From: Haliotis cracherodii
Taxonomy: Eukaryota
Reading direction: 5' to 3'
Length of the DNA stretch: 64,000 bases
NCBI RefSeq assembly: GCF_022045235.1
Contig: NW_027266275.1
Location: forward strand, 80,042,001-80,106,000
The notes below the pieces were generated by a model, which saw only the letters and a program-made list of their open reading frames with translations, did no database searches and was not told where the DNA came from. The position numbers were made by a program, and so were the translations under genes. Below, piece by piece: positions 2,953 to 63,475 of the stretch (its first letter is position 1; each line of letters begins with the position of its first letter).

Positions 2953-5900
2953 ATGACATCGCGAGTGAGCCTTCTAGTTCTTCTGTACAGTGGACTTGTA
3001 TACAAGGCCGGTGAGTAGTACTGCTTGTATGTGATCCCGCCAAGTAACCTGGATACCACGGGTCCAGCTAGAAGAGGTCCTATGTGGTGGTGAAAGTGTG
3101 TGGTGGTCCTGGCTGATTGTGTGGACCACCGTGGATCGTTGCTCATACTAACAGCCATTGGTTTATCTATCCCAGTCTAATTATTTTCAAGTCTGAAAAA
3201 TACCACTCCCTCACATCATTGAGTCGATTCTTCTTTAGCCCCTGGCTCATTAATCCTGAACTTCATCAGGAAACGGGAAATATATAATATTTACATTGTT
3301 CCAAAACTAACCCTACTATTGTTGAAGGATACCTGCTGTGAGGATATTACATTTGTGTTCCCTGAGAGACCGGAACTGCCACGTTTCGGTGTAGTTTACG
3401 GAAAGAAGGCCAAACTTGCTTGACTGATCCGCCCACTATAAACTTTTGTTGAAAGGAAAACTAAATCTGAATTTAGTCTTTCATCCTGCCGATAAGGTTG
3501 TAGCATTTTGCAACAAACACATTGTTTCGAAACATCCACACACTGTGAATAACTTTGCATCAATATTTTTGTGTGCAGAAATGTAAAGAAGTCCTGGATT
3601 AAGGGACGCAACTCTGCACAGCTAATTGCTGCGCCTTGAACGACTCGGCCTCAATATAGTATATTAGGTCACTGCCAGGTTTCGTGACCTCGTTGCGTGT
3701 ACAATCGTGATGTATCAGGGGAACGCCGCTGCACGATGAGAATTCTAAATTCGTATTTGTTGTTACATTTGCTCAACATGTAAAGTGTAGAATTACACCG
3801 AAACCAGGACGTAGTATTAACGGTGGGGTTTTATGCACATTAAGTACATATGAACATAAATCACAGCGACAAAACCCCTTAATTAATCACAAGAAATCCA
3901 TTGTACAATCCCATAATCACAAGAAATCCAATGTACCATTCCGGCAATATCATGAGCATGTGTTTAAATATCTCCATCAAAAAGTGATGATACCTGGTGT
4001 TCGCGCGATAGGGTGACCCTGTTCTGCCCAGCGTTCGCACCCATCACAAACACATGCAAAGGCAAGTTAACTGTTCACCTGAAATAACGGGAACGCAATG
4101 CGGTTCTTTTTTCCTGAAGTATGAAACAAAGACAAGAAAAGATCTTTGACAGGGAATATAGAATGAGAGAGGCGTCTGTAAAATATTGCCTCGTAGGGGC
4201 AAGACATCATTCTACAGTAAAACTTTTGGAAAACTTTACTAAGACTTTGAATGTTGTAACCCTGATCAAATAACTTTTGAGCAACAAAGAGCGAGCACGA
4301 TCATATGGCAAAAGTTGTGACATACAGCGTGACTCTCATTGCAGAAGGAGCATGTCACTGTACGACCGGATGTGACCCTGTCAGCAACTGTACGGGAGCC
4401 TGTGACACTGGATGGTATGGGCCGTACTGTCAGAAACGTAGGTGCCTAAGTGTATTTATATCTTTAGTTGAATTAAGGGATAAACCTTCGGTGTTTTGAA
4501 ATTTGATGTAGTTGCACTGTAGAATAGATATACCTCTTATTTTAATTTGGTTCTTTAGCGCGAGGTTTCAAAGTATAAATATATAAATATGAAAAGGTAT
4601 AAATGTATAAATATAAAAATGTTTGTAAACAACATGTTGTCAAATACATTTGATAAAATTCGACAAACCATATCATATTACATTATGTTCGATATCTGTA
4701 TGAACTCACTACCGATGTACTGCAGTTGCGTTTGGTCACATATTCAAAACACCAAGTCGAGCATCTTTCTCTTTCAACTGCAGCTGAAATATTGATAATG
4801 CGACGTAAAACTAATTTAGCTCTCTTCTCAAAATATCAAAGAACTACCACCAGTGTCTTGGATAGAAGACACTTTATGAAGTCACAATTGAAATGTTACG
4901 CCACGTAGCGTTGCTTTGCTGTGACCTCACACAAGTGTCTACTAGGGACATTGTTGGAATATACTGAAAAAAACATTCGTTTTAAATAAAAAGGTTATTC
5001 ACAAAAGACTCTCCAAGGTTAGATTTAGATATGATATTCTACTTCATATATCCCCAGTGGAAACAAATATTGCATAATATATTTCTTTCATCTGCCTTCA
5101 AGAGAATGTCGCCTTGAATGGGAGCGCTTCACAGATAAGTACCTTCGATGTAAGTGACGATTATACTGACTGGAAACGTGTCCACTTCACTGCTGATTTG
5201 GCTGTCGATGGCTTCTCCCACACTGACTTCACCAAGAAGCCTCTTACATGCACACACACAGGACCCGACCGTCACGCATGGTGGAGGGTGAAGCTGGCGA
5301 GGAATGGCGTCAATCAAATCAAACACATGACTATCTATAATCGCCAAGGATGTAAGTTGCCTGTCATTATTATACTCTCATTAACAGGAATGCAACAACG
5401 CCAACTTTCATATTCCATTCAGGTATCTCCTAAGATTATTATACAGTATAACAACCATGTCTACTGTATAACAACCATGTATATTGTATAACAACCATGT
5501 ATATTGTATAACAACCATGTCTATTGTATAACAACCATATATACTGTATAACAACCATGTATACTATATAACAACCATGTATACTGTATAACAACCACGT
5601 ATACTGTATAACAACCATGTCTACTGTATAACAACCATGTCTACTGTATAACAACCATGTATATTGTATAACAACCATGTATACTGTATAACAACCGTGT
5701 CTACTGTATAACAACCATGTCTACTGTATAACAACCATGTCTACTGTATAACAACCACGTATACTGTATAACAACCATGTCTACTGTATAACAACCATGT
5801 CTACTGTATAACAACCATGTATATTGTATAACAACCATGTATATTGTATAACAACCATGTATACTGTATAACAACCGTGTCTACTGTATAACAACCATGT

Positions 5901-8900
5901 CTACTGTATAACAACCATGTCTACTGTATAACAACCATGTATATTGTATAACAACCATGTATACTGTATAACAACCGTGTCTACTGTATAACAACCATGT
6001 CTACTGTATAACAACCATGTATATTGTATAACAACCATGTATATTGTATAACAACCATGTATACTGTATAACAACCGTGTCTACTGTATAACAACCATGT
6101 CTACTGTATAACAACCATGTCTACTGTATAACAACCATGTATATTGTATAACAACCATGTATATTGTATAACAACCATGTCTACTGTATAACAACCGTGT
6201 CTACTGTATAACAGCCATGTCTACTGTATAACAACCATGTATATTGTATAACAACCATGTATATTGTATAACAACCATGTATACTGTATAACAACCGTGT
6301 CTACTGTATAACAACCATGTCTACTGTATAACAACCATGTCTACTGTATAACAACCATGTATATTGTATAACAACCGTGTATACTGTATAACAACCATGT
6401 CTACTGTATAACAACCATGTCTACTGTATAACAACCATGTCTATTGTATAACAACCATGTATACTGTATAACAACCGTGTCTACTGTATAACAACCATGT
6501 CTACTGTATAACAACCATGTATATTGTATAACAACCATGTATATTGTATAACAACCATGTATACTGTATAACAACCGTGTCTACTGTATAACAACCATGT
6601 CTACTGTATAACAACCATGTATATTGTATAACAACCATGTATACTGTATAACAACCGTGTCTACTGTATAACAACCATGTCTACTGTATAACAACCATAT
6701 ATACTATATAACAACCATATATACTGTATAACAACCATGTATACTGTATAACAACCATGTATACTGTATAACAACCATGTACATTGTATAACAACCATGT
6801 ATACTGTATAACAACCGTGTCTACTGTATAACAACCATGTATATTCAATCTTGAGGCCTTGCAAAATTGTAAAAACGTTAACATTTTCCCAAAATATCTA
6901 AAGATAGACAGCTCTGCAAGACATAAGTAGTTCTTGACAGGTGGTGAACACATCATTGATGGAAAACACAAGAATATACGACGACAGTGCATTGCAGGTG
7001 TTCCTGCTTCACATATATATACATGACCAACACAGATGTGTGCAAGCATCATTGTTCATATCTTAACAAGACACAACACTCACCTGGATGACCGTTTAAT
7101 ATATTTAGATTATCAACATTCAAATATTTTGGTAACAGTTCAAACGTCATAGAATGGTAATTCTTGTCTCACTTTTATGAAGTAATTAATGTTGCAGTAA
7201 GTATAATTGTGGAAACAAATTTCATTTTCTATGAATGCTTCATATAAGGTATGCCAGGTTTACTGCGATAAGAGGCAGTGTATGTACATGGAAGTGTACA
7301 GTCCTGGTTCCCGACCCCCCTGTATATGTAACTGTGCATGTCTTGGCACACAGTTGAAACGAGACGCCAGGGAATGGACATTTCCGTGGATGGACAGCAA
7401 TGTTACGAATGGACTAAAGACGCAGCACCAGATACTGTGGCACACGTGGTCTGTGATCAGACGCTGGTAGGAGAAGAAGTGACCATCGCGATTCCCGGAC
7501 AGTTCTTGTCTCTCTGTGAAGTACAGGTGTTTGGTAAGTTGCTAATAGTTTATCGGACACACACTCTACTTAACTATTAATATATGTCTAGTTTATTGAT
7601 TATTTTTTTGTAAATTTCGTTTGAAATTCCGTTCGATTTCACTCATAATAATAATGCGTGCTCTTATTTACTTATTAAAAGAATTTGAATTACACTATAT
7701 GAATTACAAAGTGATAATAAATAGTAGGTATTTATTTAAAAAAATTAAATTGATGTCAAATACTTTCTCCCGTAACAGTACATTATGCACATTTATAACA
7801 TCTCCAACGATGTAAATAGCTCTTTATAATTGTGAACATATTGAGCATCGTGTATGTCACAACAATTATCATGGGGAAATAACTGTAGAATATCCTATGC
7901 TACATACTTTATGCAATGAATATTCCATTTAAGTTTGCAATGACCTCTGGTACGGAGAAGATTGTGACAAACGATGCAACTGTTTTCCCGCATCAGACAT
8001 CTGTGACAAAGGTAATGGAGCCTGCAAGAGAGGATGCCAACCTGGCTTCACAGGCTTAGACTGTCAGCAAGGTGAGAATACTGAGTTTCTGGTGAGATTA
8101 TTGACTCCACACAAAATCCATATCTACGTTCTAGGTCCCTTTAAATTATTTGAAGGTTATTAAGTAAGGTTTAATAAAGTAATGTATTACCCACCCGTTT
8201 AATAACCATACATCTGTATTATGCATTGTGTAAAACCAAAGTACTGCGGGAACAAATTCACAAAACTCCCAACATCACTGGGCTTTTTCAATGACATTGC
8301 GTGAGGAGATGACAGATCACTGAGAGGAGCTTATGCACACTCGCTGACCCAAGCAACCCCGTTTCTAGGCTGACGTCACATGGCATTGTTTTGCCGGTGG
8401 ATCATACAGGAATTACAAAAGTCTCTTAAGTTCAGGAATGAGAATGGGATGATGCTAGAGCTGAGAAAGAGATGAGGGTAATGGCAAGCTGAAAATGTGA
8501 GCGTTTAATGAAATACAAGTATATGCTCTAGGATAGGTAAGAGAATAATGCCCAGTCCCTACAATTAAGAAATATTCTGTGCTATAATAGCCGTCGAAAC
8601 AGATTTCATTGGGCGTACAATGCAAAATAGTGATGGAAATTATATGACTGGATCCCTGAAAGGCAGATACGACACCAGGTGTTCGCGAAATAGGTAAGCA
8701 TGTGATGCACCAACCAGAAGCACCGGCTCACACCATTCTCATTACAAATGTGAGTGTTTCTTTGTGGCTTAAAGCCGCATTTGACGAGTTCTTCTTATGG
8801 TACATGTTAATGTATGCAATGATGATACAGTTATTCCAGAGTGACACGAGAACCGGGATTGCCCCTGAGGCTTCGGTGTGGCTAGTGAACACTTTAACCA

Positions 8901-11900
8901 CTGTGCTACCAAACCGCCTCTTTCAGGACGATCAGCTATCGGGACGCATATTTTAGGGATTCGTTGGAAATGTGTTTATCCGAACAATCATACTGGGGCC
9001 GGATAAATGCGGTTTTACCACATAAATCAAAGCAGACTAGATATACTTCAAATAGTTATTGTCCAATGGACAGTTAATCGACTCAGGGCAGCTAGTGAGC
9101 TCAAGCGGGCAGTCAGGAAAAAGCCAGAGATTAGTGGACCTTTAATGAAATGGAGATACCGTACACTGGATAATCGAGGATGTTACTAATATTTTCGTTT
9201 AAAATTCTGAATTTGAAGTATATGCTCGACCTTTCAGAGTGCGAAGATGGCTTCTACGGCATGAACTGTACGTCTTCATGTGGCCAATGTCTCAGCACCA
9301 CTATCTGTGACAAGAGTGACGGCCACTGTCCACGTGGGTGTGAGACTGGCTGGACCACGGTCACGTGTGATAGAGGTCAGCAAAGCGTGTCTACATTTCT
9401 CAAAGTAGTCAATAATGTCATAATTCTAAATACTATAAACTGATTGTGAGAGCGTAAATTGGTTTTAACGACGTTTTCAACAATATTCCAGTTATATGAC
9501 AGCGTGTCAGCTTAGAGTGGGAGGAAAGCTCGAAGTGATGTAGGTCTCAGACGTTTACCACTTTGGTAAAATACTCGATAACGATATGGTGCTGACAAAC
9601 ATAGAACATAATCAGGGCGCACTGGGATTCGAACCCATAATCATAGGTTCCTGGCGTGTCCAAGGGACGCAACACTGCACATATAATCTGATGAAGTTTA
9701 CCTCTACATGCATACACATTGTAGCACGCTCTTACGTTGAGCAGATTAAATATTATTTATGAATATATGTTTCAATGTTGTTTGTATTGTATTACACGTC
9801 AGAGCGTGACGTGACAGGTGTATCTGTCGGCGGCGTCTTACTGGTAGTAGTCGTCGTTGTAGTAGCTGTGTTGGTGATTTTGATTAAAAGGTACGGAACA
9901 GGCGTAACTTATAACATCATTCTGTGTTCTGCTCATTAATTATTGTCGGGTTTACTCACGATCAGTGCTTGAGTTATTTTAATGTTGATATAACAGAATT
10001 TTGATCAGTTTTGTAATACAAAAACATTTACTGTATAGAAATGCTTACGAGTTCCATAAACGTTGCTTTGACATGTGAGTTGAGATCTACTATTTTAAAT
10101 CTGTAACTTTGTTTAAGTATGTGAAACGATTTGTGTCTATTAAAACCTACTATAGTAAACTACGGTTATAACGAACTCAAAGGGACCACTACTTCTAGTT
10201 CGTTATAACCGTAGTTCGTTATAAGCATATATATATATATAGGATATATACAAATGGCCAGGACCCCAAAAAGCCATTTCGTTATATCCGTCAGTTCGTT
10301 ATAAACGTATTATACTTTACCAAACTTGCAGCGTTGTACAAATATAGAACCTGAAGCCGTTGCTCTTGTAAATAGCAAGGTTTGCTTACATCCAAGTGAC
10401 GTCATGAACTATATCTTATTCGAAATTAACATAATACTGTCTGTCGTGTTGTTACAGGAGACAGGGTCACTCGAGGCCTGCCGCGTCCATGACGCTCTAC
10501 AAGGAACCATCTGTCCAGGAACATTCAGATGCTTGTGACGGTAGTGTGACAACTGTTTTATCCATGTCATGTAAAAGAAATATTATCCTGAGTGAGTGAG
10601 CTAATATTTTTCGCAGTCGCAGTCATGAATATAACACATGTGCCAGCATGGAAAACGCTTGACGCCGTCGGGTACAACGCCACACAATAACCTCTGGCAC
10701 CCGTTGTAGGCACCCGATCTTCTTGCACACCAACATGCATAACAATGTATACTTATGTGTATTGATAGCTAAATCAATGTAACGGCATAGGGTACTGTCA
10801 GTGTTACATTGAATGCATAAATAACAGAGAAATGATAGTGGAATATATAACTGAAAAATATATTTTCGCATTGCGGTGATACTGCTATTATGACGGGTAT
10901 GTGGACCGGAACTAGTTAGCGTCAACTCCGGATATATATAGGAGCCGGATATAACAAATCGCCGACTATTTTGGTTATTTTGCTAAACGTCTTTAGGAAA
11001 TTTCGAACTGATTTAAAACCTGGCCCAAGTCTACGACATAGAATAGAAAATACCGAATATGACATAATGGGTCATTTTTACATTAGACAATACACAATGT
11101 AGATAAATATTATCAGTCTCAATCACACAGTGACTTTGTCCATTTCAGGTGAGAAAGATGAGGACGAAGTCTTTTCCGCAGAGATAGAAGACGATACGGT
11201 TGAGGGCGCTGGCTACTGTAACTGGGTCTCTCCTTGTGTGTCTTTGGAGAAACTGGTTGAGTACATCAGAATGAAAAAGGAAGATTCGGCCTTCGAGACC
11301 GAATACAAGGTATTACGTGTGGGCTACATCTTAATACTACTGTTAAGGATGAGTTTAATGACAATACATACATATTTTTAATACATACATATATATAGCA
11401 CACACACATATATATAATACATATTAAACTGTGTTCCCATGTGAGGTTCCCGGCGGCGAATGAGCAGATTTCAAGGGAGTTGAGGGTTGTACAACTTAAC
11501 AGTTTATCGTTCACATAATTTCGTAGGCAACCAGCCACAAATGATACGTAATCCCCAAATACCTGATCCCCCAGTGATATCATTCAAATAGTTCTGAAAC
11601 ACGGCGTGCAGCCCTATTTATTTGCTCCCTCCCGCATCACACTCGCATCTTCTCCATAGAAAAGGTGTCCAGTTGGGACGAGGGATATAATAATAACGCT
11701 TTTCTGATTTTGCAGGCGATTCCTTATGGTATCAGAGGCAGCGTTGAAGAAGGAAAAAGGGCAGAAAACAAATTGAAAAACAGATTTGCTGCGTTGTACC
11801 CATGTAGGTTCCCTCATGTACCGACATGCATCTGACACTGTCAGGTCAACAGCTTCATGTAATCACTGTTGTTTGTCATCAGTTGTGGGTCTCCGTAAAT

Positions 11901-23900: not shown

Positions 23901-24859
23901 CACTGTTTATAAACAAACATGGCGTCGCCCTCGTCATCTGGCGATCGAGTCAGAATTAACCATCGGGGATCTGGATAAGCTACAGGGATGATTGTTATTA
24001 TCAAAAGAACAGTCTAATATACTGAAAATCAGTGTCTAACTGTGACGTAGCTAAGGCATTTTATAAGTTTTGGCAACTTTGGAGATATAAATTTCGAAAC
24101 AATTTTGCGAGGGCACGAGGCCTAGCCAAGCGGGATCAGTAGCCATATCTGTGCTTGTAGACCTCTGCGGCTTGAAACCTTCTCTACAAATTAAAATAGT
24201 TGGATTTTGAACCAAATATGTTTGAATTGTTACCTTGTTTCGTTTTGTCGCTGTGTGTACATCTGACTACACTTCTTAACGTTATGACAGACCGACTGTC
24301 AACAACGTCTGACCGTGGCCGTGACGTCTCATAGACTAGGGTTAGAGTGGCTTCCCTTTGACAAAGGGCAGTTACTCTAGCGGACAGACCGATGGATTGC
24401 CGCGAAAGGAAAATATAAACCATTGTTGTTTTGCGTATATGTTGCTTCGCCACTGTATAAGAAACGGATTTCAGTTGGAACTATATTGGCTACTGTCACT
24501 GTCCGACTGACCCATCACTTACCCTATGACGTAATATATATTAATGCGCGCATTCCAGGAAAACTCGCTATGTTTCGGTAATGTTTGTGAGAGAGGGAAA
24601 GCGATTTTGAAGCACAGAATTAAAGAATGACATTATATGATAAAGAGGTTATCACGCTTGTGTGTTTGGGGATGGTAAATAACCTGTATTAGGAATAAAC
24701 ACTATGTATTTAGCTCGCCAAGGCTCGCTAAATACAATGTTTATTCCTAATGCAGGATATTTACCATCCCCAAACACACTCGCGTGATAACCTCTATGTG
24801 TGCCGTTGTATATTGTTGACAGTAAATAGGGGCGTTTATCTTTCATACCAATACCAATA

Positions 24860-24944
<85 letters not shown>

Positions 24945-30780: not shown

Positions 30781-30958
30781 CCCTAAGCAGTCATCTTCCA
30801 TGATGACACTCAATATTTGAGACATGATTAATTAAAACATCACATTCATCAGTGTTTTTGAGGTAATTCCTTGTAGTGGAATAATAAAGCAATTATATGT
30901 ACAGACGAACTACATTTTTATTTCATTTAGTTTTCATGGTGCTATTGATGATCATATA

Positions 30959-39250: not shown

Positions 39251-39399
39251 TAAAGATTTCAATTGACTTTAATTATTTGTTATTGTTTTTTTTCAATCCG
39301 TTTTAACACTATCTCTTTGAAACTGACGGTTGGTATGGGACAGAAAAAATCCTGACAACCACGTTCCCCACCCCCCAACCCGTTACAGTTATCTTCATC

Positions 39400-54200: not shown

Positions 54201-57200
54201 GGGCGGTGGAGAGAAGGTGGTGAGAGATCAGATGGGGTGGCGATGGGTGGAAGGGGCGGTGGAGAGAAGGTGGTGAGAGATCAGATGGGGTGGCGATGGG
54301 TGGAAGGGGAAGTGGAGAGAAGGTGGTGAGAGATCAGATGGGGTAGCGATGGGTGGAAGGAGAGGAGGAGCGAAGTTGGTGAGAGATCAGATGGGTTGGC
54401 GATGGGTGGAAGTGATGGAGATTAGGTTGTGAGAGACCAGGGCCCACTTGCACAAAGCGATCTTAGCGCTACAACAAACGTAAGCCCATGTTAAAGTATG
54501 GGAGTTACGATCATCTTAGCGCTAAGATCGTCTTGTGCAAGTGGGCCCAGATGGGGTGGCGATAGGTGGAAGGGGCGATGTAGAAGGTGGTGAGAGATCA
54601 GATTGCGTGGCGATGGGTGTGGTTAGAGGTGCTTGAAACTAGTAATGTCCCCTGAAATGTAAGGTGCTTAAATACAATAAGTGATATTGACATTATACTG
54701 GTCAATGAAGGAGTGGTGGAGGTACTAGAGCGAGAGGATGGTGGGTGGTGATCGACGGAAAACACGGTATGTCCTCTGAAATATAAGATACCTGAACTAA
54801 CTGCAATCAGTAACGGTGACCATGAGATACTTGGCATGTTCTAATGTCAGCGCTGGAGTGGGGCGGACGGGGACGTTCATTGCTCTGGACTATCTGATGG
54901 ACCAGGCTGAGGCAGAGCACAGGGTGAACGTGTTCCAGTGTGTGTCAAGGATGAGACAGGCCAGGATGAACATGGTCCAGACCGTGGTGAGTATGCACAC
55001 ATAAACAGTGACAACTACTAACTCTGCCCAGCACAGTCAAACCACACAGAAAATAGTTTGTAACAGTTTCGTATTGGTACATGTACTCTATGGCAAAACC
55101 GGACAACCTTCATAAGATTATGTTGGTCACTACAGGCTTGCTCGCTTCTTTTATGCATGTATTTCAGAATCAATTCGAGTTCGTCCATCTGGCGGTTCTG
55201 GAAGCCCTTGAGAGTAGAGGCACATTCTACAAAATGACTGATTTTGACCGCATTTTCGGAAGTGAGAAAAGTTACAGCAAACAGCAAGACACAAGCTTGA
55301 AGAAGGAATTTAAGGTAGGGTCGTTTCGCAGATAACAAAATTAAAATAAGATCACAATCACAAAAGATTAAAATGATAAAACATATTAAAAGATTGAAGT
55401 TAAAACTTTACAGTTCATTACTCCTAAACGGATCCTCCTTTCTAGCTGAGATTTCAAAAAGAAAAACATCAGCTCGTTCCTTTTATGTATGTTTGTCCTT
55501 TTAGTCAATTCAATTACAAAGACCACAACAGACGGAAAAAGCCATTTCTGATGCGATGCTTCCAGAAAATGTGTCCAAAAACAAGAACAAGGCCATTCTT
55601 CCAGGTATCTAGTTTACATGACGTTTTCTTTGTCGATATAAAACAAAGGTTCCATGATTTGCCGCAAAATGGTAAAGCGCGCGTGACCTTGTGACTGCCT
55701 TTTATCTACCCCCATGATGAAGCCCCCTTTATCAATTATATTTAAATAATTCAATGTAATTGATTTCAGGGAACAAGTCACGGCCTTATTTATCCACCCC
55801 AGTTGAAGGCTACAACAATTACATCAATGCTGTCACTCTACCAGTATGTTAAACATTCATTTTCTTTAATTTGCTATAGATTCACTGCCTACGTCTATAT
55901 GATGTTTGTTGTTTAACGCCGCACTCCGCAATATTCCAGCTGTATGACGGCGGTCTGTAAATAATTGAGTCTGGACCAGACAATCCAGTGATTGAAATCA
56001 TGAACATTGATCTGCAAATTGGGATACGATGGCCAACCAAGTCAGCGAGTCTGACCACCCGATTCCATCAGTCACCTCCTACGACCAGCATGGGTTGTTG
56101 AATACTAACTCGGGTTTTCAAGGGGAAAGTCTATATGATCAAACAAGAGATGTTGATGAGAATAATCAGATGGTATAATTAACCTCTAAACTACAATCCG
56201 AAACATCTGACTAGTTTTGCAGGGAGATGAAAAACAAGATTTCCAACTTTTCTATATGCGTCTAATCTTTGAGGTAGCTTTATTAACTTCAGCTGTCTGA
56301 AATAACCGTACTCATATGTTCTGGTGATTGGCCAATGAGATATTGACATAAATATTTGTAAATATTTCCTTTACCGACTCACAAAGAAATAATACTCATA
56401 TTCCAACTTTCAACGATATTTTATGTGGATTTTCAAAATATCATCCAGTTTCCTCAAAATATATATTTCCTCCACCGCCAGTCCGTGATGAGGTCCTCCA
56501 TGCTGATCGCTACTCAGACGCCCATGGAGAACACCGTGGTGGACTTCTGGAGACTGGTGAACGATCACGACTGCTTCACCATTGTGTGTCTGGATGATTC
56601 CCAGGTGACATGACCAATGTACCCTCATAGCCTCCCTACACACTACGCTACGCTCTATTGAATAGACATTGTTTTAAGTCAAAGAAGTAATGTAAGATGA
56701 GTATTACAATCTTTGTTTAATTTGTATAGTTATGTGATAAATACAGTCCCGGGAAGAAGAGGTACTCAAAGGGCCGTCGTAAGAAGTCACCAGGGTGGTT
56801 ACAATTTGTAACCTGGTAAATTGTTGACATCGGACTCCAATGGCGGTGAGGCTGCGGATTTTGCCTGACCCAGGTTCGATTATTTACAGTCCGCTGTGAT
56901 ATGGCTGGAATATTGTTGAATATGACACTCACTCAATTGCGAATACGATCCGTGAAGATCCGGTGTAGAATAGGTCTTCAAAACCCATTCTTGCTTTAAA
57001 AGACGACTATGCTTGTCGTAAGAGGCGACTAACGGGATCGGGTGGTCAGGCTCGCTGACTTGGTTGATGTATGTCATCGTATCCCAATTGCGTGGATCGA
57101 TGCCCATGTTGTCAGTCACTGGATTGTCTGGTCTAGACTCGATTATTTAAAGACCGCCGCCATATAGTTGTTATATTGCGGCGTTAAACAACAAACAAAC

Positions 57201-60200
57201 AAACAAACAAACAAACAAACTAACAAACGAAGAAACAACGACAACGACACAATGACAGTGACTCACGTGGAATATAGCAACTGATCGGTCTTTAGAATGA
57301 CAATGTTCTGAATTAAAGAGGCCATGATAAATCCAACATAATCTTTCCTTCAGGATGTTGAGCGCCTATACCCTGGCAGCAAGGGGGTCCTCCAAGCAGG
57401 TCCATTCCACATTCAGCATGCCCAAGAAAGAAGTATGGGAAGTTTAACAGAGAAGACCCTGATGCTGACCAATACTAAACAGGTTGGTGGGATGGGGTAG
57501 TCCTTGAGCTTTATCTCGTCACGCCAAAGATCCGGTTTCATGTCCTCCAATGAGTAAACTGTATGAGGTGAATGTTGGGTGTCCACTCTGGCGATATAGC
57601 TGGAATGTTGCTGAAGGTGTTTACTAATTAACTCAGGTGAGATGAGGACAACATTTTGGTTAAGACAAACCGATTGCTCGGACAATTTGCCAAACTGTTC
57701 CAATTATTTTCAAATTTTCATCTTATTTAGAGGTCTGACTATTGCGTTTTTAAAGGAAATTCGGCAGAATGAACAAGGCTGCTGGACGAAGTGACGACAA
57801 TTACTGTAACAAAGATTTATCCCGAGACAACAATGCTATTTCACAAATGTTATATTTGGGATAGGACTTTCTTTGTTAAGTACAGATAGTCGTACTTTTG
57901 GGGGTTGAGTTCCGTTCGGAATTCGAACCCACACTGCCTGAGTGAGTCACCTAATCGCCAGCAGTGGGGGGTCGAATCCCGCAAGGGACTCAACCCCAAA
58001 GGTACGAGAATCTGTACTTTACAAAGAAATTGTTATCCAAAATATAACATTTGTTACATTTGACCACTTTCTAAATGGTATTGTGTGTTCAATGCTATTT
58101 CAGTTCAGCGGTTTTCAAACACGTACGTCGCGAAGTTTCTACTTGCATTGAAATTATACCGATACCGCTTTCGTACGGTCAAATATGTTTGTATGTTTCT
58201 ATGTGTATTCTAACTATTGACTGTAATATATTTCAGCGACGAACTCCTCAGTCTGTCAGTGTCCTGAGTCTTAACTCTCTGCTTGTCTCAATGTCGCGCG
58301 ACACTGCTGGGTTGCTAGAGCTGGTCAACAGAGTGGATACGACACTCAGTCAAGATCAGCACAAAGTTCTCGTCCACTGTGTGTGAGTATCTGATGTTCG
58401 ATATGTTCCTGTAAGGGGATACAGAGAGATATACAAGTGCTGCTTCAGCACCCTCTCGCCACTGAGTCCTCGGTTACACGCGCACACGGAGTGTGGATAC
58501 AGGAGCCGCTGGCACAGTGAACGACGTGTTTGGGAAGACACAAAAGCATCCTGTGCAAAAGCTGAGAGTATCCTACACTTGAATTCTACTCTCACACGTG
58601 ATGATGGTTTCAACATTCGCCCGAAACTCACATCCGATACCGTCGTTACGTCGTTACCTCCCTAGGCTCTGTTACATAAAGCGTATACTTGAACATAGAC
58701 GTACGATTGTCGTTTACTTCCATATCGACCCCTTAAGATCCGGGGTAGAATAGGTCTTCGGCAACCCATGCTTGTCGTAAAAGGCGACTATGCTTGTCGT
58801 AATAGGCGACTAATGTTATCGGAAGGTCAGACTCGCTGACTTGGTTGATGCATGTCATCTTGTCACTATTGTGTGGATCGATCCTCATGATGTCAATCAC
58901 TGGATTGTCTGGTCCATACTCAATTATTACAGACCGCCGTCATATAGCTGGAATATTGCCGAGTGCGGCGTTAAACAACAAACAAACGAACAATATAGAC
59001 GTGCGGCGGTTGTTTCTCTTAGACTTGACCTCAGAACTTTCAACCGTCGTTATTTACCAGACACAACTAGTATGCCAGAACATAGACTGTCACAACCTGC
59101 ATACATAGATGGTGAGGATGTTATTGAACATGATGTTGATTGATGTTTCAGTGACGGTGCCCGGATGTGTGGGGTGTTCTGCGGTGTCCTGAACACCATC
59201 AGCAGATTGAGGCTGGACTCTGTGGTGGACATCTATCTGACCAACAGGGAGCTTCAGTTGGCCAGGCCACAGTTTATACAGGCATTCGTAAGTACAACTT
59301 GAATTGGGAATTTTCGGTATGCCCGTCCATAATGTAACTACAAAACGTCAACGCCAAAGATTAACCAGTCTCGATTATCCGCCGATAACAGATTCCATTG
59401 GACGTCAAAAACGCAAAATCGCGGTGAAAATAATATGGATGGATCACTGAGAATAAGTGATGACGCCAGGTGTTCGCGAAAATGGTGAAATGAACCTCGG
59501 GACGGTATCTTCCGCCACCACACACAATACAAGAAACATGAACGTTTTCCTTCTAATATCATGAACATGACATAATAATAACGGTAACGTTGATATACAT
59601 GCGTACTTTCAGTTTTATAGAAAAAATACACAATAGTATACAGCAATGTTTGACAGTCCTTACAAAGAATATACGGATATATATATATATTCAGTGTACA
59701 TTATTCACATTAGGGGTAGATCTAATATAAACAAGTAGTTGAAACATTTTGTGTTTAATAATGGACACAGTTTAACCTCTGTTGAATGGCGTCGGAACTG
59801 AGTGAGTATAACTGAATGCGTTATATAATTTGAGGCGTAGAAGAAAAAGGATATGAGGATGGAGGAATAAATGAAATGCTAGAAGTAGGCCATGTGCCAC
59901 AGTGAGCTTTGCCACAGGCATCATCACAACCACGTGTACAGTACAACTGCCGTTGAATAGGAAGACCGTATGTCCGTTTTATCCGGGAAGGGCGATAGAC
60001 CAACCGAAACGTTATACGCATGCGTGTGGTGCAGGAAGAGACTCTGAAAGTGAGACCAAAGTCTCTGACGTCAATGGAGGTCGACGCATCTATCTACAGG
60101 AAGTGCTGTGATACGTGTAACGGTAGTACCTCTGCAGCAACGGCGAGCAACCAGTGTCGGTGTCGACATACTGGAAAATGATCAGCAAATAATGTTTGAC

Positions 60201-63200
60201 ACTTTGTGAGTAACATGAACGGATCGTGGACGATCGAAAGTTAAAACGACAGGATTTTCTTGCCATTTCGGCCATGATGAAGACACCGGATCCCTTATCG
60301 TGATGTCCGAAATGAATAGCACTGGCATGGCTCGGTGGCTGGATAGTTTAACGGGAACATGTGGCTATGAGCTTACATTTATATACGCCCAGATAGGAGG
60401 TGTAATTTGATGTCAGTAAACTGAAGAGGGGGGTTGACATTTGACACCTGTCATGATATCTCGTGGCAGTGTTGGGTTAGGTCCGTCTACGAATCCCTGT
60501 GAAAATGTGTTCCTGACTGAAAGACATGCTGCGCATGTAGGTTACTACGACTGTTTACGTTCAGTCTGTCTTTTATAGACAATGACAACACACAGCCATG
60601 TCGTATCAGGTTCTTTACTACATGTGGGAAGTATGTACTGGTATAACATCCTCACTTCAGTGTATAATAAACTACTGTTATAACGAACTCAAAGGGGCCA
60701 CTAATTTTTTCGTAATAACCGTAGTTCGGTATAAGCATATACAACATATATACACCAAATGGCCGGGACTAAAAAATAAGTTCGTTATATCGGCAAGTTC
60801 GTTTTAAGCGTGTTCGTTATAAATACAGTTCACTGTAATTAAAGTTGCGAACCAACAATAACTTCTGGCCTCCGACTCTGTGCTGTTCCGGTCCGGACTA
60901 CCAATTGCATGTTTAGTCATTCAAGTGTTGTTTAAATATAATTTGTTTGTTTCAACTTGAAAGGGATTGAGAAATTGGCCTNNNNNNNNNNNNNNNNNNN
61001 NNNNNNNNNNNNNNNNNNNNNNNNNNNNNNNNNNNNNNNNNNNNNNNNNNNNNNNNNNNNNNNNNNNNNNNNNNNNNNNNNNNNNNNNNNNNNNNNNNNN
61101 NNNNNNNNNNNNAATGCCGATTTTGTAGTGATATCACACTGAGATACCATGCCGCCTACTGACTCCGAGCCGACCAATCCTTGTTTTAGCCCCTTAATGC
61201 CGAGCGCCAGGCAGGGTAACAAATAGTACCATCTTTTAAAGTCTGTTTGTATGACGCGGCCGGGGATCGAACCCCAGATCTTCCGCTCTTCGGTCGGACG
61301 CTCTACCACTAGACAACGGAGGGGGCCCTCCGACACTGGAATATGCGGACAACTCACTTGGGACCGACAGTGAAATAACAAATGAAATAGATTTGATTCT
61401 TTACTTAATGAACACTATATTACACATTGAATAATTCAACATGATTAGCTCACATGTCTGTCCCGATACGTTTGAAATACTGTTAAATAACGGCCTCAGA
61501 CCTGCGCCAGGCAGGGTAACAAAAAGTACTATCTTTTAACGTCTGTTGGTATGACACGGCCGGGGATCGAACCCCTGACACCGATAAACAGTATCGTCGT
61601 GTTTGAGTAGAAGGTAGTTCACATTAACATAATATACCTCATTCCGGTAGGGTAAACATTAACAGTTACTACCTAGAGGGGATGTCGGGTTGAAATAGAT
61701 CGGCAAACTATGCTGGTTGTGAAAGGCGACACAATGATGGATCGGTTGTACAAAGTGGGTGAGTTGGTTGGCGGAGTCATTGCGCCTGGAACGTTGCTCA
61801 TGATATCAATCACTGTTTTTTTCGGGTCCAGATTCTTAAATTTTACAGACCGCTGTCATATGCCTGGAAACAGCGTTTTTTAAATACCACACAAACACAA
61901 TTGATAGAAGCAACTGAAACGTTCGTATAATATCCACAGCCGCTTCCCATAAAGGTAGTTTGTGGTGGAGAGGCGGTAGAGCGGTGGTGGAGCGGTGGTA
62001 GAGTGGTGGTAGAGTGGTGGTAGAGCGGTGGTAGAGTGGTGGTAGAGTGGTGGTAGAGTGGTGGTAGAGTGGTGGTAGAGCGGTGGTAGAATGGTGGTAG
62101 AGAGGTGGTTGAGTGGTGGTAGAGCGGTGGTAGAGCGGTGGTAGAGTGGTGGTAGAGTGGTGGTAGAGTGGTGGTAGAGCGGTGGTAGATCGGTGGTGGA
62201 GTGGTGGTGGAGCGGTGGTAGAGTGGTGGTAGAGCGGTGGTAGAGCGGTGGTAGAGCGGTGGTAGAGTGGTGGTAGAGCGGTGGTAGAGCGGTGGTAGAG
62301 TGGTGGTAGAGCGGTGGTAGAGCGGTGGTAGAGCGGTGGTAGAGTGGTGGTAGATCGGTGGTAGAGCGGTGATAGAGCGGTGGTAGAGTGGTGGTAGAGC
62401 GGTGGTAGAGCCGTGGTAGAGCGGTGGTAGAGTGGTGGTAGAGTGGTGGTGGAGTGGCGGTAGAGCGGTGGTAGAGCGGTGGTAGAGTGGTTGTAGAGCG
62501 GTGGTAGAGAGGTGGTAGTGCAGTGGTAGAGAGGTGGTAGAGCGGTGGTAGAGGGGTGGTAGAGTGGTGGTAGAGCGGTGATAGTGCGGTGGTAGAGTGG
62601 TTGTAGAGCGGTGGTAGAGAGGTGGTAGAGCGGTGGTAGAGCGGTGGTAGAGAGGTGGTAGAGGGGTGGTAGAGAGGTGGTAGAGCGGTGGTAGAGCGGT
62701 GGTAGAGAGGTGGTAGAGAGGTGGTAGTGCAGTGGTAGAGCGGTGGTAGAGTGGTGGTAGAGAGGTGGTAGAGCGGTGGTAGAGCGGTGGTAGAGCGGTG
62801 GTAGAGTGGTGGTAGAGTGGTCGTGGAGTGGCGGTAGAGCGGTGGTAGAATGGTGGTAGAGAGGTGGTAGAGAGGTGGTAGTGCAGTGGTAGAGCGGTGG
62901 TAGAGTGGTGGTAGAGAGGTGGTAGAGCGGTGGTAGAGCGGTGGTAGAGCGGTGGTAGAGTGGTGGTAGAGTGGTCGTGGAGTGGCGGTAGAGCGGTGGT
63001 AGAGTGGTGGTAGAGTGGTCGTGGAGTGGCGGTAGAGCGGTGGTAGAGTGGTGGTAGAGCAGTGGTAGAGAGGTGGTAGTGCGGTGGTAGAGCGGTGGTA
63101 GAGCGGTGGTAGAGCGGTGGTAGAGTGGTGGTAGAGCGGTGATAGTGCGGTAATACCACTGGCTCGACCATGAGAAGGGATTGTCTACGGATAACAATCA

Positions 63201-63475
63201 GGAAACTTTACATATTCTCTAAAGTTTAATGTGTGTTTGTATATTCAGTTACCTATGGTTGTATTTCCATTTTGTTAAGTGGTTTATCACTCAAGTGACA
63301 CTCTTAGAGTGTTTTCTATGTTTAATATGAAATTTTTATAGCTTAGCCCTTGTCCCTGCAGGCTGACTACAAGTACTGCTACGACATGGCAAAGGAATAC
63401 ATCTGCTCTGAGAACGTCTATGCCAACATGGGACAACCTGCTTCTGAGCCGGGGAAATCGGGGACCTGTGCATGA
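42207..63475 (+). CDS. Gene B: paralogous F-type lectin/EGF receptor-type protein tyrosine phosphatase (about 1010 aa, 25 coding exons; exon 2 truncated by assembly gap)
   Basis: Exons: 42207-42297 (putative signal exon, less certain), <43226-43314, 43747-43983, 46555-46728, 47687-47824, 47973-48110, 48342-48488 (extra EGF), 48701-48815 (TM), 48953-49008, 49255-49424, 49643-49730, 49910-49983, 50259-50295, 50533-50630, 51148-51276, 51628-51773, 54851-54986, 55168-55314, 55505-55604, 55770-55843, 56482-56604, 57354-57482, 58237-58382, 59152-59287, 63362-63475. Intron phases and most exon lengths match gene A. Motifs [33 protein letters not shown]2 HCVDGARMCG, end [20 protein letters not shown]. 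Confidence 0.88.
42440..43088 (-). mobile_element. R4/Dong-like LINE RT C-terminal fragment in gene B intron 1
   Basis: [52 protein letters not shown]. The frame continues after the SINE insertion at 42767-42902. Confidence 0.7.
42767..42902 (-). mobile_element. SINE family B inserted in the LINE fragment
   Basis: 13 bp TSD ctatcatgaagag. tRNA-like head ggggcggtcgggtagcctagtgg on the minus strand. Confidence 0.88.
43089..43225. other. Assembly gap (N run) removing the start of gene B exon 2
   Basis: The N run ends inside the EGF exon (CHCRNKPC...). Confidence 0.99.
43747..46728 (+). CDS. Gene B F-type lectin domain, exons 43747-43983 and 46555-46728
   Basis: [14 protein letters not shown]...AGLALDGN...[16 protein letters not shown]...ITIYNRRE|[17 protein letters not shown]...[29 protein letters not shown]. 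Confidence 0.85.
44357..44865 (+). mobile_element. SINE family A with triplicated 5' segment and duplicated 3' part
   Basis: Three tandem copies of the gtgaagat...agaataggtcttcagcaacccatgcttg head, and a second partial body after 44705. Confidence 0.8.
44955..45262. repeat. About 153 bp tandem duplication
   Basis: catccacacatcagcatcgaatccacacccc...gaacgtaagtcctca occurs twice. Confidence 0.9.
45998..46445. repeat. 30-31 bp AT-rich minisatellite, gene B intron 3
   Basis: Unit tatctatatcatgatgttataacaatatagt. Confidence 0.95.
47225..47474 (-). mobile_element. tRNA-derived SINE family D (Meta/CORE-like)
   Basis: On the minus strand: ccgtggtctagtggtagagcgtccgcc...ggggttcgatccccggccgcgtcatacc. 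Second copy at 61113-61325 and a fragment at 61503-61577. Confidence 0.75.
50809..50971 (+). mobile_element. SINE family B, full length
   Basis: ggggcggtcgggtagcctagtg...cccgggttcgattccc...gcgtaaaaccatactcactcact. Confidence 0.88.
51628..54986 (+). CDS. Gene B PTP D1 catalytic exons (51628-51773, 54851-54986)
   Basis: Same motifs as gene A. The intron contains a 2.7 kb G-rich minisatellite. Confidence 0.95.
51818..54600. repeat. 53/54 bp G-rich minisatellite, about 50 copies, in the intron that splits the gene B catalytic motif
   Basis: Unit ggtggagagaaggtggtgagagatcagatgggg(ttc/tg)gcgatgggtggaaggggc. Confidence 0.97.
54441..54547. mobile_element. PIF/Harbinger-like MITE (107 bp) inserted in the minisatellite
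   Basis: 31 bp TIR ggcccacttgcacaaagcgatcttagcgcta with 2 mismatches, and a 3 bp CAG target duplication. Confidence 0.8.
55904..56128 (-). mobile_element. SINE family A
   Basis: 11 bp TSD gtctatatgat. Confidence 0.8.
56948..57228 (+). mobile_element. SINE family A
   Basis: Family A consensus with (AAAC)n tail. Confidence 0.85.
57843..58054. repeat. 212 bp fold-back element with about 92 bp arms
   Basis: acaaatgttatatttgggata...ttcgaacccacactgc / gcagtggggggtcgaatccc...tatccaaaatataacatttgt. Confidence 0.85.
58727..58990 (+). mobile_element. SINE family A
   Basis: Family A consensus. A degenerate copy also lies at about 61670-61880. Confidence 0.8.
60982..61112. other. Assembly gap (N run) in the last intron of gene B
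   Basis: N run. Confidence 0.99.
61960..63150. repeat. 11 bp G-rich minisatellite (ggtggtagag[c/t/a]) in the last intron of gene B
   Basis: About 105 copies of the 11-mer. Confidence 0.97.

What the first reader, a model, noticed from the sequence alone, without database searches (positions are those of the whole stretch)
2953..63475. Tandem pair of lectin-EGF receptor tyrosine phosphatases: a candidate diversified glycan-sensing receptor system
Seen: two apparently intact paralogues couple an F-type lectin domain and MEGF10/Draper-like EGF repeats to a D1/D2 PTP. Known: vertebrate RPTP classes use Ig, FN3, MAM or carbonic-anhydrase-like ectodomains rather than F-type lectin + EGF, and F-type lectins are glycan-recognition proteins used in invertebrate immunity and gamete recognition. 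From memory, EGF/galactose-binding RPTPs have been noted in snail parasite-resistance regions, so the class may not be wholly new. Inference: this is an expanded family of receptors that link non-self/self glycan binding directly to tyrosine dephosphorylation, with variable sensors on a conserved signalling module.
Basis: partly seen in the sequence, partly recalled or inferred. Interest (0 to 1): 0.85.

Follow-up and report, generated by a model that had tools for sequence, protein, structure and literature searches.

The report
Abalone lectin-EGF receptor phosphatase gene pair
Two neighbouring abalone genes encode cell-surface tyrosine phosphatases whose outer part is a fucose-lectin-type domain plus EGF repeats. 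Both are real and intact, but they belong to a large mollusc receptor family that is already annotated and was described in 2025 in schistosome-vector snails.

Summary
The window (Haliotis cracherodii, C12:80.04-80.11 Mb) holds two collinear + strand genes, at 2953-27228 (24 exons) and 42207-63475 (25 exons). Each encodes signal peptide, EGF, F-type lectin domain, 2 or 3 EGF, TM, active D1 and degenerate D2 PTP. My models are identical to RefSeq proteins XP_071106716.1 and XP_071106715.1 ("RPTP epsilon-like"). Spliced contigs link the lectin, EGF, TM and D1 exons of gene 2.

The first gap hides the start of gene 2's exon 2, so continuity there cannot be shown. The second gap is intronic.

The lectin domain matches only F-type lectins by sequence and by fold, and both genes keep the His/Arg/Arg fucose triad.

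The family is expanded: at least 37 lectin-exon loci in this genome, and relatives across molluscs and in an annelid. The lectin domain is the fastest-evolving part (dN/dS 2.3 against a recent soluble duplicate). PTP exons are homogenised by gene conversion.

The class is not new. MEGF/galactose-binding-domain RPTPs were described in Biomphalaria sudanica (Nat Commun 2025). The scan's first readers also noted this family on two other pieces of this genome. Glycan binding and an immune role remain inferred.

Verdict: new member of a known kind, moderate interest.

The parts
2953..27228 (+). Gene 1, coding span from the signal-peptide ATG to the stop. 24 exons; equals XP_071106716.1 residues 42-978. 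The annotated upstream coding exon lies outside the window at C12:80039316-80039414.
2953..3010 (+). Gene 1 exon 1: signal peptide, ends in phase 1
4345..4437 (+). Gene 1 exon 2: N-terminal EGF-like module
5103..7533 (+). Gene 1 F-type lectin domain, two exons (5103-5351 and 7354-7533). Carries the His and first Arg in exon 3 and the second Arg in exon 4.
7934..9375 (+). Gene 1 EGF modules 2 and 3 (exons 7934-8071 and 9238-9375)
9803..11309 (+). Gene 1 transmembrane exon (9803-9890) and juxtamembrane exons (10458-10540, 11149-11309)
11716..16398 (+). Gene 1 D1 PTP domain, 8 exons. Motifs KNRF, DYINA, WPD, VHC|SAGVGRTG (split by the intron 14840-15322) and QTxxQYxF.
17113..27228 (+). Gene 1 D1-D2 linker and D2 PTP domain, 7 exons. 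The P-loop lacks the catalytic Arg position and there is no WPD. Intron 17716-25013 holds a LINE fragment.
42207..63475 (+). Gene 2, ATG to stop. 25 exons; equals XP_071106715.1.
42207..42297 (+). Gene 2 exon 1: signal peptide, ends in phase 1
43089..43225 (.). Gap (N). Hides the acceptor and the first codons of gene 2 exon 2. Junction not testable and not filled.
43226..43314 (+). Gene 2 exon 2, visible part: N-terminal EGF-like module
43747..46728 (+). Gene 2 F-type lectin domain, two exons (43747-43983 and 46555-46728). PF22633 is above the Pfam cut-off on the whole protein.
47687..48488 (+). Gene 2 EGF modules 2-4 (exons 47687-47824, 47973-48110, 48342-48488); one more than gene 1
48701..49424 (+). 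Gene 2 transmembrane exon (48701-48815), 56-nt exon (48953-49008) and juxtamembrane exon (49255-49424). All three are joined in spliced contigs.
49643..55314 (+). Gene 2 D1 PTP domain, 8 exons. The catalytic motif is split by intron 51774-54850, which holds a 53-bp G-rich minisatellite.
55505..63475 (+). Gene 2 linker and D2 PTP domain, 7 exons. The last intron, 59288-63361, contains the second gap.
60982..61112 (.). Gap (N) inside the last intron of gene 2; no coding sequence affected
15054..15464 (+). Gene-conversion tract: 96% identical to 54582-54992, including about 270 nt of intron. Further tracts: 13448-13550, 17480-17727 and 26188-26346, matching 50531-50633, 56369-56616 and 59146-59304.

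Best explanation
Shown: the window carries two intact, old paralogous genes of the black abalone. Each encodes a type-I membrane receptor tyrosine phosphatase. The ectodomain is one short EGF module, one F-type lectin domain (jelly-roll fold, His/Arg/Arg triad retained) and two or three MEGF/Tie2-like EGF modules. The cytoplasmic part is a classical tandem: D1 has every catalytic motif, and D2 lacks the P-loop Arg position and the WPD loop, so D2 is probably regulatory. Gene 2 is transcribed and spliced as one unit from the lectin exons into D1.

The genes sit in a local cluster with lectin-EGF genes that lack the phosphatase. One is membrane-anchored just upstream. One is a soluble recent duplicate of gene 2's ectodomain, about 480 kb away. 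The cluster is one branch of a mollusc-wide, strongly expanded family, the MEGF/galactose-binding-domain RPTPs described in Biomphalaria.

Inferred: the lectin domain binds a fucosylated (or related) glycan on another cell, a microbe, a parasite or the matrix. Multivalent ligand clusters or dimerises the receptor, or excludes it from a contact zone. That changes the access of D1 to phosphotyrosine substrates, as in other RPTPs. Loops around the binding site diversify while gene conversion keeps the catalytic exons uniform. The phosphatase-less paralogues would act as decoys or co-receptors. The likely setting is haemocyte or epithelial recognition.
For: - Gene models are identical to RefSeq proteins.
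- Spliced contigs of runs X1 and X4 join 46555-46728|47687-47824, and 47983-48110|48342-48488|48701-48815|56-nt exon|49255-49424 plus about 250 nt more. The bin depths of the X1 contig fit D1 exons 49643-49730, 49910-49983 and 50259-50295.
- PF00102 matches twice per protein, E 1e-116 and 1e-117. PF22633 scores 30.9 bits (above cut-off) for gene 2 and 19.4 bits for gene 1.
- Window-derived lectin exon profiles hit only solved F-type lectins: 3cqo 6e-12, 1k12 1e-6, 2j1r/2j22 2e-6, 3le0 2.5e-5 for exon 3; 3cqo 2.5e-3 for exon 4.
- The AF2 model of soluble paralogue P0169 (87% identical to gene 2's ectodomain) has pLDDT 89.8. Its top 11 Foldseek hits are all F-type lectins; 1k12 gives E 1e-11 and target TM 0.75.
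- The His/Arg/Arg columns are kept in both genes and in 46, 50 and 50 of 60 family members.
- The D1-D2 part matches LAR, PTP-sigma, alpha and epsilon at E about 1e-120.
- The lectin domain evolves fastest. H. cracherodii vs H. rufescens identity is 76.6% (gene 2) and 90.9% (gene 1), against 92-97% for the other domains.
- Against the soluble duplicate, dN/dS is 2.33 in the lectin domain and 0.33 in the EGFs (Fisher p 0.036).
- Variable sites concentrate in loops: 34/74 against 17/69, p 0.009.
- Conversion tracts show dS 0.016 in the D1 catalytic exons.
- Family size and spread.
- Published relatives are linked to schistosome resistance (PMC12297450). Many RPTPs are enriched in oyster agranular haemocytes (PMC13070813).
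Against: - No binding data exist for any member.
- The adjacent Cys-Cys of the eel lectin's binding loop is absent, and the Arg-to-Arg spacing is one residue shorter. Fucose specificity is therefore uncertain.
- Gene 1's lectin domain is below the Pfam cut-off.
- dN/dS above 1 is not significant on its own (binomial p 0.10), and lectin dN is about the intron divergence. Relaxed constraint in one copy is therefore not excluded.
- The tissue of expression is unknown. The runs are only guessed to be RNA, although intron-less joins show that they are.
- Between the old paralogues, lectin dN/dS is about 0.2, i.e. purifying on the whole.
- The exon 1-exon 2 junction of gene 2 is hidden by the gap.
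Confidence: 0.6

Rival explanations
1. The receptors are real, but the lectin-like domain is a protein-binding or adhesion module rather than a glycan sensor. It would work like the jelly-roll LN domain followed by laminin-type EGFs in netrins and laminins, or like discoidin domains, mediating homophilic or heterophilic protein contacts.
For: After the F-type lectins, Foldseek lists netrin and laminin LN-LE fragments that cover the jelly-roll plus EGF arrangement. The Cys-Cys of the eel lectin pocket is missing and the loop is one residue shorter. The membrane-anchored neighbour has lost the His and the first Arg yet is conserved in three Haliotis species.
Against: The netrin matches have rmsd 9-10 A and low TM, while the F-type lectins match at rmsd 2.3-3.8 A. 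Both window genes and 46-50 of 60 relatives keep the three sugar-binding residues. The sequence profiles hit only fucose-binding lectins.
Confidence: 0.22
2. The pair acts mainly in development or neural wiring, or in gamete or larval settlement recognition, like LAR-type RPTPs in axon guidance. It would not act in immunity. The fast lectin evolution would reflect relaxed constraint after duplication.
For: The cytoplasmic tandem is as close to LAR and PTP-sigma as to alpha and epsilon. Lectin dN is about equal to intron divergence against the soluble duplicate. Nothing is known of the expressing tissue.
Against: Relatives lie in a schistosome-resistance region of Biomphalaria. Dozens of RPTPs are enriched in oyster haemocytes. 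Large lineage-specific tandem arrays are typical of recognition families, not of conserved wiring receptors. Substitutions cluster in loops while the core, the cysteines and the triad are kept.
Confidence: 0.15
3. The architecture is an annotation artefact: a lectin-EGF gene and a separate phosphatase gene wrongly fused, or one or both copies are pseudogenes.
For: Lectin-EGF genes without a phosphatase do exist next door. The gap hides one junction of gene 2.
Against: Overlapping intron-less contigs from two studies run from the lectin exon through EGF, TM and juxtamembrane exons into D1 exons. Both reading frames are open through 24 and 25 canonical exons. The same architecture is predicted in four Haliotis species, bivalves, other gastropods and an annelid.
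Confidence: 0.03

Closest known systems
MEGF / galactose-binding-domain RPTPs of the SudRes1 region, Biomphalaria sudanica (Nat Commun 2025, PMC12297450)
   Same: Single-pass receptors with extracellular EGF repeats plus a galactose-binding-like domain and intracellular tandem PTP domains. They are clustered paralogues with neighbouring MEGF genes that lack the PTP. The extracellular part is diverse. Planorbid homologues (Biomphalaria, Bulinus) with PF22633 + PF00102 were retrieved by sequence alongside Haliotis proteins.
   Different: That paper does not identify the domain as an F-type lectin and does not mention fucose. Its genes are adjacent to antistasin genes and are tied to a resistance phenotype. 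Nothing of that kind is known for the abalone pair. Direct orthology to BSUD genes was not tested.
F-type lectins: eel agglutinin AAA (1K12), striped bass FBP32 (3CQO), pneumococcal and S. mitis fucose modules (2J1R, 3LE0)
   Same: Same jelly-roll fold (Foldseek E 1e-11 to 1e-9, rmsd 2.3-3.8 A). Same N-terminal NVAL..G, A-x-DG-N, C-x-H, WW and C-terminal L-x-LCEV motifs. The His and two Arg of the fucose site are retained.
   Different: The known lectins are soluble, or modules of toxins and enzymes. Here the domain is one module in a transmembrane phosphatase. The vicinal Cys-Cys is absent, and the Arg-Arg spacing is one residue shorter. Binding is untested.
Vertebrate tandem-domain RPTPs (LAR/PTP-sigma type R2A; alpha/epsilon type R4)
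   Same: D1 active and D2 degenerate tandem, at E about 1e-120 to solved D1-D2 structures. From established knowledge, activity is regulated by ectodomain-driven clustering or dimerisation, and PTP-sigma is a precedent for glycan (glycosaminoglycan) sensing by an RPTP.
   Different: Those ectodomains are Ig/FN3, or very short and glycosylated. None has a lectin or MEGF-type EGF ectodomain. The RefSeq label 'epsilon-like' is only a best-hit name.
MEGF10 / Draper / Tie2 EGF repeats
   Same: The EGF modules match Tie2 EGF repeats (E 2e-6) and the laminin-EGF and stabilin-EGF Pfam families. Neighbouring phosphatase-less paralogues are named MEGF10 or MEGF6 by RefSeq.
   Different: Only 3-4 EGF modules. 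There is no EMI domain and no ITAM/NPxY tail. The output is a phosphatase.

Membership tests
Classical receptor-type protein tyrosine phosphatase (tandem D1/D2) | PTP domain with P-loop HC(X5)R, WPD loop, KNRY-type motif and Q-loop in D1 | tested here: met
   PF00102 E 1e-116 and 1e-117 with two stretches. [19 protein letters not shown] and QTVxQ[YF]EF are present in both genes.
Classical receptor-type protein tyrosine phosphatase (tandem D1/D2) | Second PTP-fold domain (D2), often catalytically impaired | tested here: met
   There is a second PF00102 stretch. In the P-loop VHC-x-DGARMCG the canonical Arg position is Met, and there is no WPD. Inactivity is inferred, not assayed.
Classical receptor-type protein tyrosine phosphatase (tandem D1/D2) | Signal peptide and single transmembrane helix between ectodomain and PTP | tested here: met
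   A hydrophobic N-terminal exon and one long hydrophobic stretch followed by KRRQ are read directly from the models. No dedicated predictor was run. RefSeq's gene 1 model starts at an upstream ATG outside the window.
F-type lectin domain (fucolectin / FTP) | F-type jelly-roll fold | tested here: met
   Model of P0169 (87% identical to gene 2's ectodomain, 51% to gene 1's): the top 11 Foldseek hits are all F-type lectins. The window genes themselves were not folded, because joined models were not sent to tools.
F-type lectin domain (fucolectin / FTP) | Sequence motif His ... Arg ... Arg (eel lectin His52, Arg79, Arg86) | tested here: met
   All three are present in both genes. The His-to-Arg spacing is as in the eel lectin, and the Arg-to-Arg spacing is one residue shorter.
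F-type lectin domain (fucolectin / FTP) | Significant match to a curated family model | tested here: inconclusive
   PF22633 scores 30.9 bits for gene 2 (cut-off 27.8) but 19.4 bits for gene 1. The Pfam model is the broader NedA-like galactose-binding domain, not an FTP-specific model.
F-type lectin domain (fucolectin / FTP) | Calcium-dependent fold stabilisation and fucose binding | not testable with these tools
   Needs recombinant protein, a glycan array and mutants.
MEGF/GBD-containing RPTP family of molluscs (SudRes1 type) | Extracellular EGF repeats + galactose-binding-like domain + intracellular tandem PTP in one single-pass protein | tested here: met
   definition taken from PMC12297450.
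MEGF/GBD-containing RPTP family of molluscs (SudRes1 type) | Homology to the planorbid members | tested here: met
   Bulinus P0210 is hit by the Haliotis profile at E 2e-228. A P0210 ectodomain search returns Biomphalaria glabrata and B. pfeifferi proteins with PF22633 + PF00102 together with Haliotis proteins. The BSUD genes themselves were not compared.
MEGF/GBD-containing RPTP family of molluscs (SudRes1 type) | Role in parasite or pathogen resistance | not testable with these tools
   No phenotype or expression data for abalone were at hand.

The most novel reading that the evidence does not exclude
Gene 2 and its soluble, phosphatase-less duplicate form a receptor/decoy pair. Their F-type lectin loops are under diversifying selection, in an arms race with a fucosylated ligand of a pathogen, a symbiont or a gamete. 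Gene conversion holds the phosphatase output constant. This would make the family an invertebrate analogue of paired or decoy immune receptors that signals by dephosphorylation.
Probability: 0.2. Interest if true: 0.65.

Novelty: new member of a known kind. Interest (0 to 1): 0.42.

Why it matters
Vertebrate RPTPs have no lectin ectodomain, so this family is a natural case of direct glycan-to-phosphatase signalling. A relative has just been tied genetically to schistosome resistance in snails.

The abalone locus adds three points:
- The "galactose-binding domain" of this family is an F-type (fucose) lectin that retains its binding triad.
- The lectin domain is the evolutionary hot spot, while the catalytic exons are homogenised.
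- Phosphatase-less membrane and soluble paralogues sit beside the receptors.

This gives concrete constructs and mutants for testing ligand specificity. It is relevant to abalone disease (withering syndrome, vibriosis) and to the snail-schistosome work. It does not establish a new class.

Tried and rejected
- Single exons against Pfam gave only sub-threshold lectin and EGF hits. This was resolved with exon profiles against PDB sequences and with the identical public proteins.
- The joined spliced models were built only inside local scripts, for comparison with public proteins. They were not sent to any search, fold or family tool. Whole-protein searches used P0151 and P0161, which are identical to the models.
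I therefore could not get the H. rufescens coding sequence, and could not compute between-species dN/dS or run site models. Only protein identities per domain are given.
- The PTC2 and BS90 Biomphalaria papers (PMC7494358, PMC11426442) do not mention phosphatases, EGF or lectins.
- Searches for 'F-type lectin' with 'tyrosine phosphatase', for PTPc/FTP/EGF, and for 'PTPRLec' found nothing relevant. PTPRLec is my unverified memory of sea-urchin C-type-lectin RPTPs. The F-type lectin review does not mention phosphatases.
- The careful tree did not finish, so only the quick tree is reported.
- The 600-aa and 453-aa ORFs at 29018-30820 and 61836-63197 are tandem-repeat artefacts, not genes.
- The gap at 43089-43225 was not filled. 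The soluble paralogue's own complete exon 2 was seen while I modelled that locus, but it was not transferred.


Full report
**What is in the window**

Six-frame ORFs and motif scans showed PTP motifs and cysteine-rich EGF-like pieces on the + strand in two blocks. tblastn of the ORFs of block 1 against block 2 gave a collinear series of about 20 matching exons, at 4.3-26.3 kb and 43.2-59.3 kb.

Exon-wise Pfam scans confirmed PF00102 on the D1 exons (E 1e-9 to 1e-15). They gave a sub-threshold galactose-binding-like hit (PF22633, E 1.4e-4) on the first lectin exon, and laminin-EGF on an EGF exon.

A profile of the two lectin exons (A1) was searched against 1.84 billion representatives. It returned a 974-aa protein matched end to end (P0007) among many multi-lectin proteins.

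P0007 and its cluster mates are RefSeq "receptor-type tyrosine-protein phosphatase epsilon-like" proteins of Haliotis rufescens and H. cracherodii. The window is G000:C12:80042001-80106000. The contig is 82,358,895 bases long, the same length as the H. cracherodii record that holds these proteins. The organism is therefore the black abalone.

**Gene models**

With P0151 and P0161 as guides, I placed every splice site in local scripts.

- Gene 1 has 24 exons from the ATG at 2953 to the stop at 27228. All introns are GT-AG. The 937 residues equal P0151 residues 42-978.
- RefSeq adds an upstream in-frame ATG exon for gene 1, which lies outside the window at C12:80039316-80039414. The Met at 2953 precedes a typical signal peptide and is the more plausible start (inference).
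- Gene 2 has 25 exons from 42207 to 63475. All visible introns are GT-AG. The 979 residues from 43227 onward equal P0161, which is XP_071106715.1.

The joined models were not sent to any search tool. Whole-protein searches used the identical public proteins.

**Gaps**

Gap 43089-43225 sits between exon 1 of gene 2 (which ends in phase 1 at 42297) and the visible remainder of exon 2 (codon frame from 43227). The acceptor and the first codons of exon 2 are hidden, so the window cannot show that the two sides are continuous or in frame. The public protein has a short bridging stretch of a length that fits the phase.

Gap 60982-61112 lies in the last intron (59288-63361).

**Transcripts**

Runs X18 and X20 are genomic contigs about 4% diverged from the window. 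Runs X1 and X4 come from two studies and are labelled only as guessed RNA. They give intron-less contigs:

- lectin exon 46555-46728 joined to EGF exon 47687-47824;
- 47983-48110 | 48342-48488 | 48701-48815 | a 56-nt exon | 49255-49424, with about 250 further bases.

The bin depths of the X1 contig (depth 15.3) fit the next D1 exons. For example, 2.88 in the bin that holds the 37-nt exon 50259-50295.

Overlapping spliced contigs therefore run from the lectin domain through the EGF, TM and juxtamembrane exons into D1.

**Domains**

Whole proteins carry two PF00102 stretches (E 1e-116 and 1e-117). PF22633 scores 30.9 bits for gene 2, above the cut-off of 27.8, and 19.4 bits for gene 1.

D1 has KNRF, DYINA (GYINA in gene 2), [14 protein letters not shown] and the Q-loop. 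In D2 the P-loop has Met at the position of the catalytic Arg, and there is no WPD, so D2 is probably inactive (inference from established PTP motifs).

The cytoplasmic tandem matches LAR, PTP-sigma, alpha and epsilon about equally, at E about 1e-120. "Epsilon-like" is therefore only a best-hit label.

**Is the lectin domain an F-type lectin?**

- The window-derived profile of the first lectin exon hits only solved F-type lectins: FBP32 6e-12, eel agglutinin 1e-6, pneumococcal fucose modules 2e-6, lectinolysin 2.5e-5.
- The second-exon profile hits FBP32 only, on the C-terminal strand motif.
- I folded P0169, a 348-aa soluble paralogue 87% identical to gene 2's ectodomain, with a 60-sequence family alignment. 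The model has pLDDT 89.8 and pTM 0.79.
- Its top 11 Foldseek hits are all F-type lectins. For 1k12: E 1.2e-11, target TM 0.75, 28% identity. CBM32 and netrin LN-LE fragments rank below.
- The His and two Arg that bind fucose in the eel lectin are present in both window genes, and in 46, 50 and 50 of 60 relatives.
- The vicinal Cys-Cys is absent and the Arg-Arg spacing is one residue shorter. The membrane-anchored neighbour gene has lost the His and the first Arg.

The fold and the motif are thus confirmed. Sugar binding is inferred.

**Family and neighbourhood**

In this genome the lectin-exon profile finds 37 loci. Six are on C12, around and near the window, and 22 lie in a 1.1-Mb array on C56 (36.6-37.7 Mb). 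Others are on C56, C6, C34 and C80.

PF00102 gives 555 first-look candidates, of which only 150 were scored, in large tandem arrays. Besides the window pair, at least seven lectin exons have a scored PTP exon 10-20 kb downstream on the same strand. This is a lower bound.

The C12 cluster holds the following:

- a lectin-EGF-TM gene without PTP at 80005601-80020473 (P0156, named "MEGF10" by RefSeq);
- a lectin-EGF fragment at 80031965-80034010;
- gene 1 and gene 2;
- another fragment at 80116937-80118753.

About 480 kb away, on the minus strand (79606409-79596021), lies a segmental duplicate of gene 2. It runs from just upstream of the ATG to about 100 bp past the last EGF exon. Its introns are about 90% identical to gene 2's. 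Its frame is open and stops right after the EGFs, so it is a soluble lectin-EGF protein. Its H. rufescens counterpart is P0169.

A quick tree of the ectodomains puts the C12 genes in one clade. Gene 1 is sister to the membrane-anchored PTP-less gene, and gene 2 is sister to the soluble copy. H. asinina has orthologues, so the gene 1/gene 2 split predates the Haliotis radiation sampled here (quick method only).

Profile searches found the same architecture (PF22633/PF00754 + PF00102, mostly with EGF) in these groups:

- four Haliotis species;
- Pomacea, Bulinus, Biomphalaria, Lymnaea, Physella and Bradybaena;
- oysters, scallops, clams and mussels;
- the annelid Lamellibrachia.

The same searches also found lectin-EGF proteins with no PTP, and EGF receptors with a kinase instead.

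**Evolution**

Gene 1 and gene 2 share 48% of residues in the lectin domain, with dS saturated there. Patches of the PTP domains are nearly identical, including flanking intron sequence:

- 15054-15464 against 54582-54992: 96%;
- the D1 catalytic segment: dS 0.016.

The homogenised exons have GC3 of 0.70-0.80, against 0.36-0.6 elsewhere. This is the footprint of gene conversion.

Between H. cracherodii and H. rufescens orthologues, the lectin domain is the least conserved part: 76.6% for gene 2 and 90.9% for gene 1, against 92-97% for the other domains.

Between gene 2 and its soluble duplicate:

| Region | Nonsynonymous differences | Synonymous differences | dN/dS |
|---|---|---|---|
| Lectin domain | 34.5 | 4.5 | 2.33 |
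| EGF 2-4 | 10 | 7 | 0.33 |

Fisher's test on the two ratios gives p 0.036. The test for omega above 1 alone gives p 0.10, and lectin dN is close to the intron divergence.

Among the four gene 2-type sequences, variable sites lie preferentially outside beta strands: 34/74 against 17/69, p 0.009. They fall in the loops that frame the sugar site in the eel lectin (the loop assignment is by analogy).

Diversifying selection on the sensor is therefore likely but not proven. Relaxed constraint in one copy remains possible.

**Comparison with what is known**

The main F-type lectin review lists CCP, CTLD, pentraxin, FA58C and TM partners, but no phosphatase.

The class itself has been described. A GWAS in Biomphalaria sudanica (Nat Commun 2025, PMC12297450) found the resistance region SudRes1 to be rich in "MEGF/GBD-containing RPTPs". 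These have extracellular EGF repeats plus a galactose-binding domain, and tandem PTPs. There are 17 such genes, 16 of them clustered, with extracellular diversity and MEGF neighbours. The paper does not call the domain an F-type lectin and does not mention fucose.

Planorbid proteins of this architecture are sequence relatives of the Haliotis ones.

In oysters, more than 40 RPTPs are enriched in agranular haemocytes (PMC13070813). That paper does not report their ectodomain types.

First-reader notes of this scan report the same family on two other pieces of this genome. This agrees with my genome-wide search.

**Verdict**

The pair is a new member of a known, already annotated and recently published kind of mollusc receptor.

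What this analysis adds:

- the F-type identity of the "GBD", with a retained fucose triad;
- the lectin-specific fast evolution against converted catalytic exons;
- the adjacent PTP-less membrane and soluble paralogues.

Function is inferred. Interest is moderate.

Noticed in passing
window 51814-54412; also 14855-14907 and 15039-15091: A G-rich 53-bp minisatellite of 49 copies fills the gene 2 intron that splits the catalytic VHC|SAGVGRTG motif. The same intron of gene 1 has only two units. This explains the GC 0.61 and GC-skew 0.79 peak.
   Followed up: partly
window 28217-30780: An intergenic 75-bp tandem repeat of 34 copies produces the spurious 267-aa and 600-aa ORFs (only a weak pentapeptide-like Pfam hit).
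   Followed up: yes
window 61962-63151: An 11-bp repeat of 108 copies in the last intron of gene 2 produces a spurious 453-aa ORF on the minus strand.
   Followed up: yes
window 5440-6843: A 20-bp tandem repeat of 70 copies lies directly after the first lectin exon of gene 1, in intron 3.
   Followed up: no
window 21926-22720: A non-LTR retrotransposon endonuclease ORF (PF14529, E 1.6e-20) lies inside the 7.3-kb intron 17716-25013 of gene 1. The matching intron of gene 2 is 0.75 kb.
   Followed up: partly
window 13008-13187, 15895-16144 and 16815-17082; 40065-40320, 44460-44700, 55900-56136, 56950-57220 and 58730-58990: A dispersed repeat of about 180-260 bp occurs in both orientations in several introns of both genes and between them.
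   Followed up: no
window 2953-9800 versus 43226-48700: The ectodomain of gene 1 has 3 N-glycosylation sequons and that of gene 2 has 17. This confirms another first-reader note.
   Followed up: yes
G000:C12:79596021-79606409 (minus strand; loci L010, L006): A segmental duplicate of gene 2's promoter-proximal half (signal peptide, EGF, lectin, three EGF). It has an open frame that stops just after the last EGF, so it is a soluble lectin-EGF paralogue. Its H. rufescens counterpart is XP_048242881.1.
   Followed up: yes
G000:C12:80005601-80020473 (loci L001, L007): A lectin-EGF-TM gene without phosphatase (RefSeq 'MEGF10', P0156). Its lectin domain has lost the His and the first Arg. A relic fragment 89% identical to gene 1's D1-D2 linker exon lies in its intron at 80007893-80007976.
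   Followed up: partly
G000:C12:80031965-80034010 and 80116937-80118753: Two further lectin + EGF exon triplets flank the pair. No TM or PTP exons were detected within 20-30 kb. They may be fragments or short genes.
   Followed up: partly
G000:C5:39149091-39150620: Two complete PTP domains lie in one 970-aa open frame without introns (E 5e-66 and 1e-52), unlike all other PTP loci of this genome, which match exon by exon. It may be a retrogene.
   Followed up: no
G000:C34:66.05-66.36 Mb; C6:19.99-20.68 Mb; C8:31.19-31.93 Mb: Regular tandem arrays of near-identical PTP catalytic exons, spaced about 35-60 kb apart, show very recent RPTP gene amplification elsewhere in the genome.
   Followed up: no
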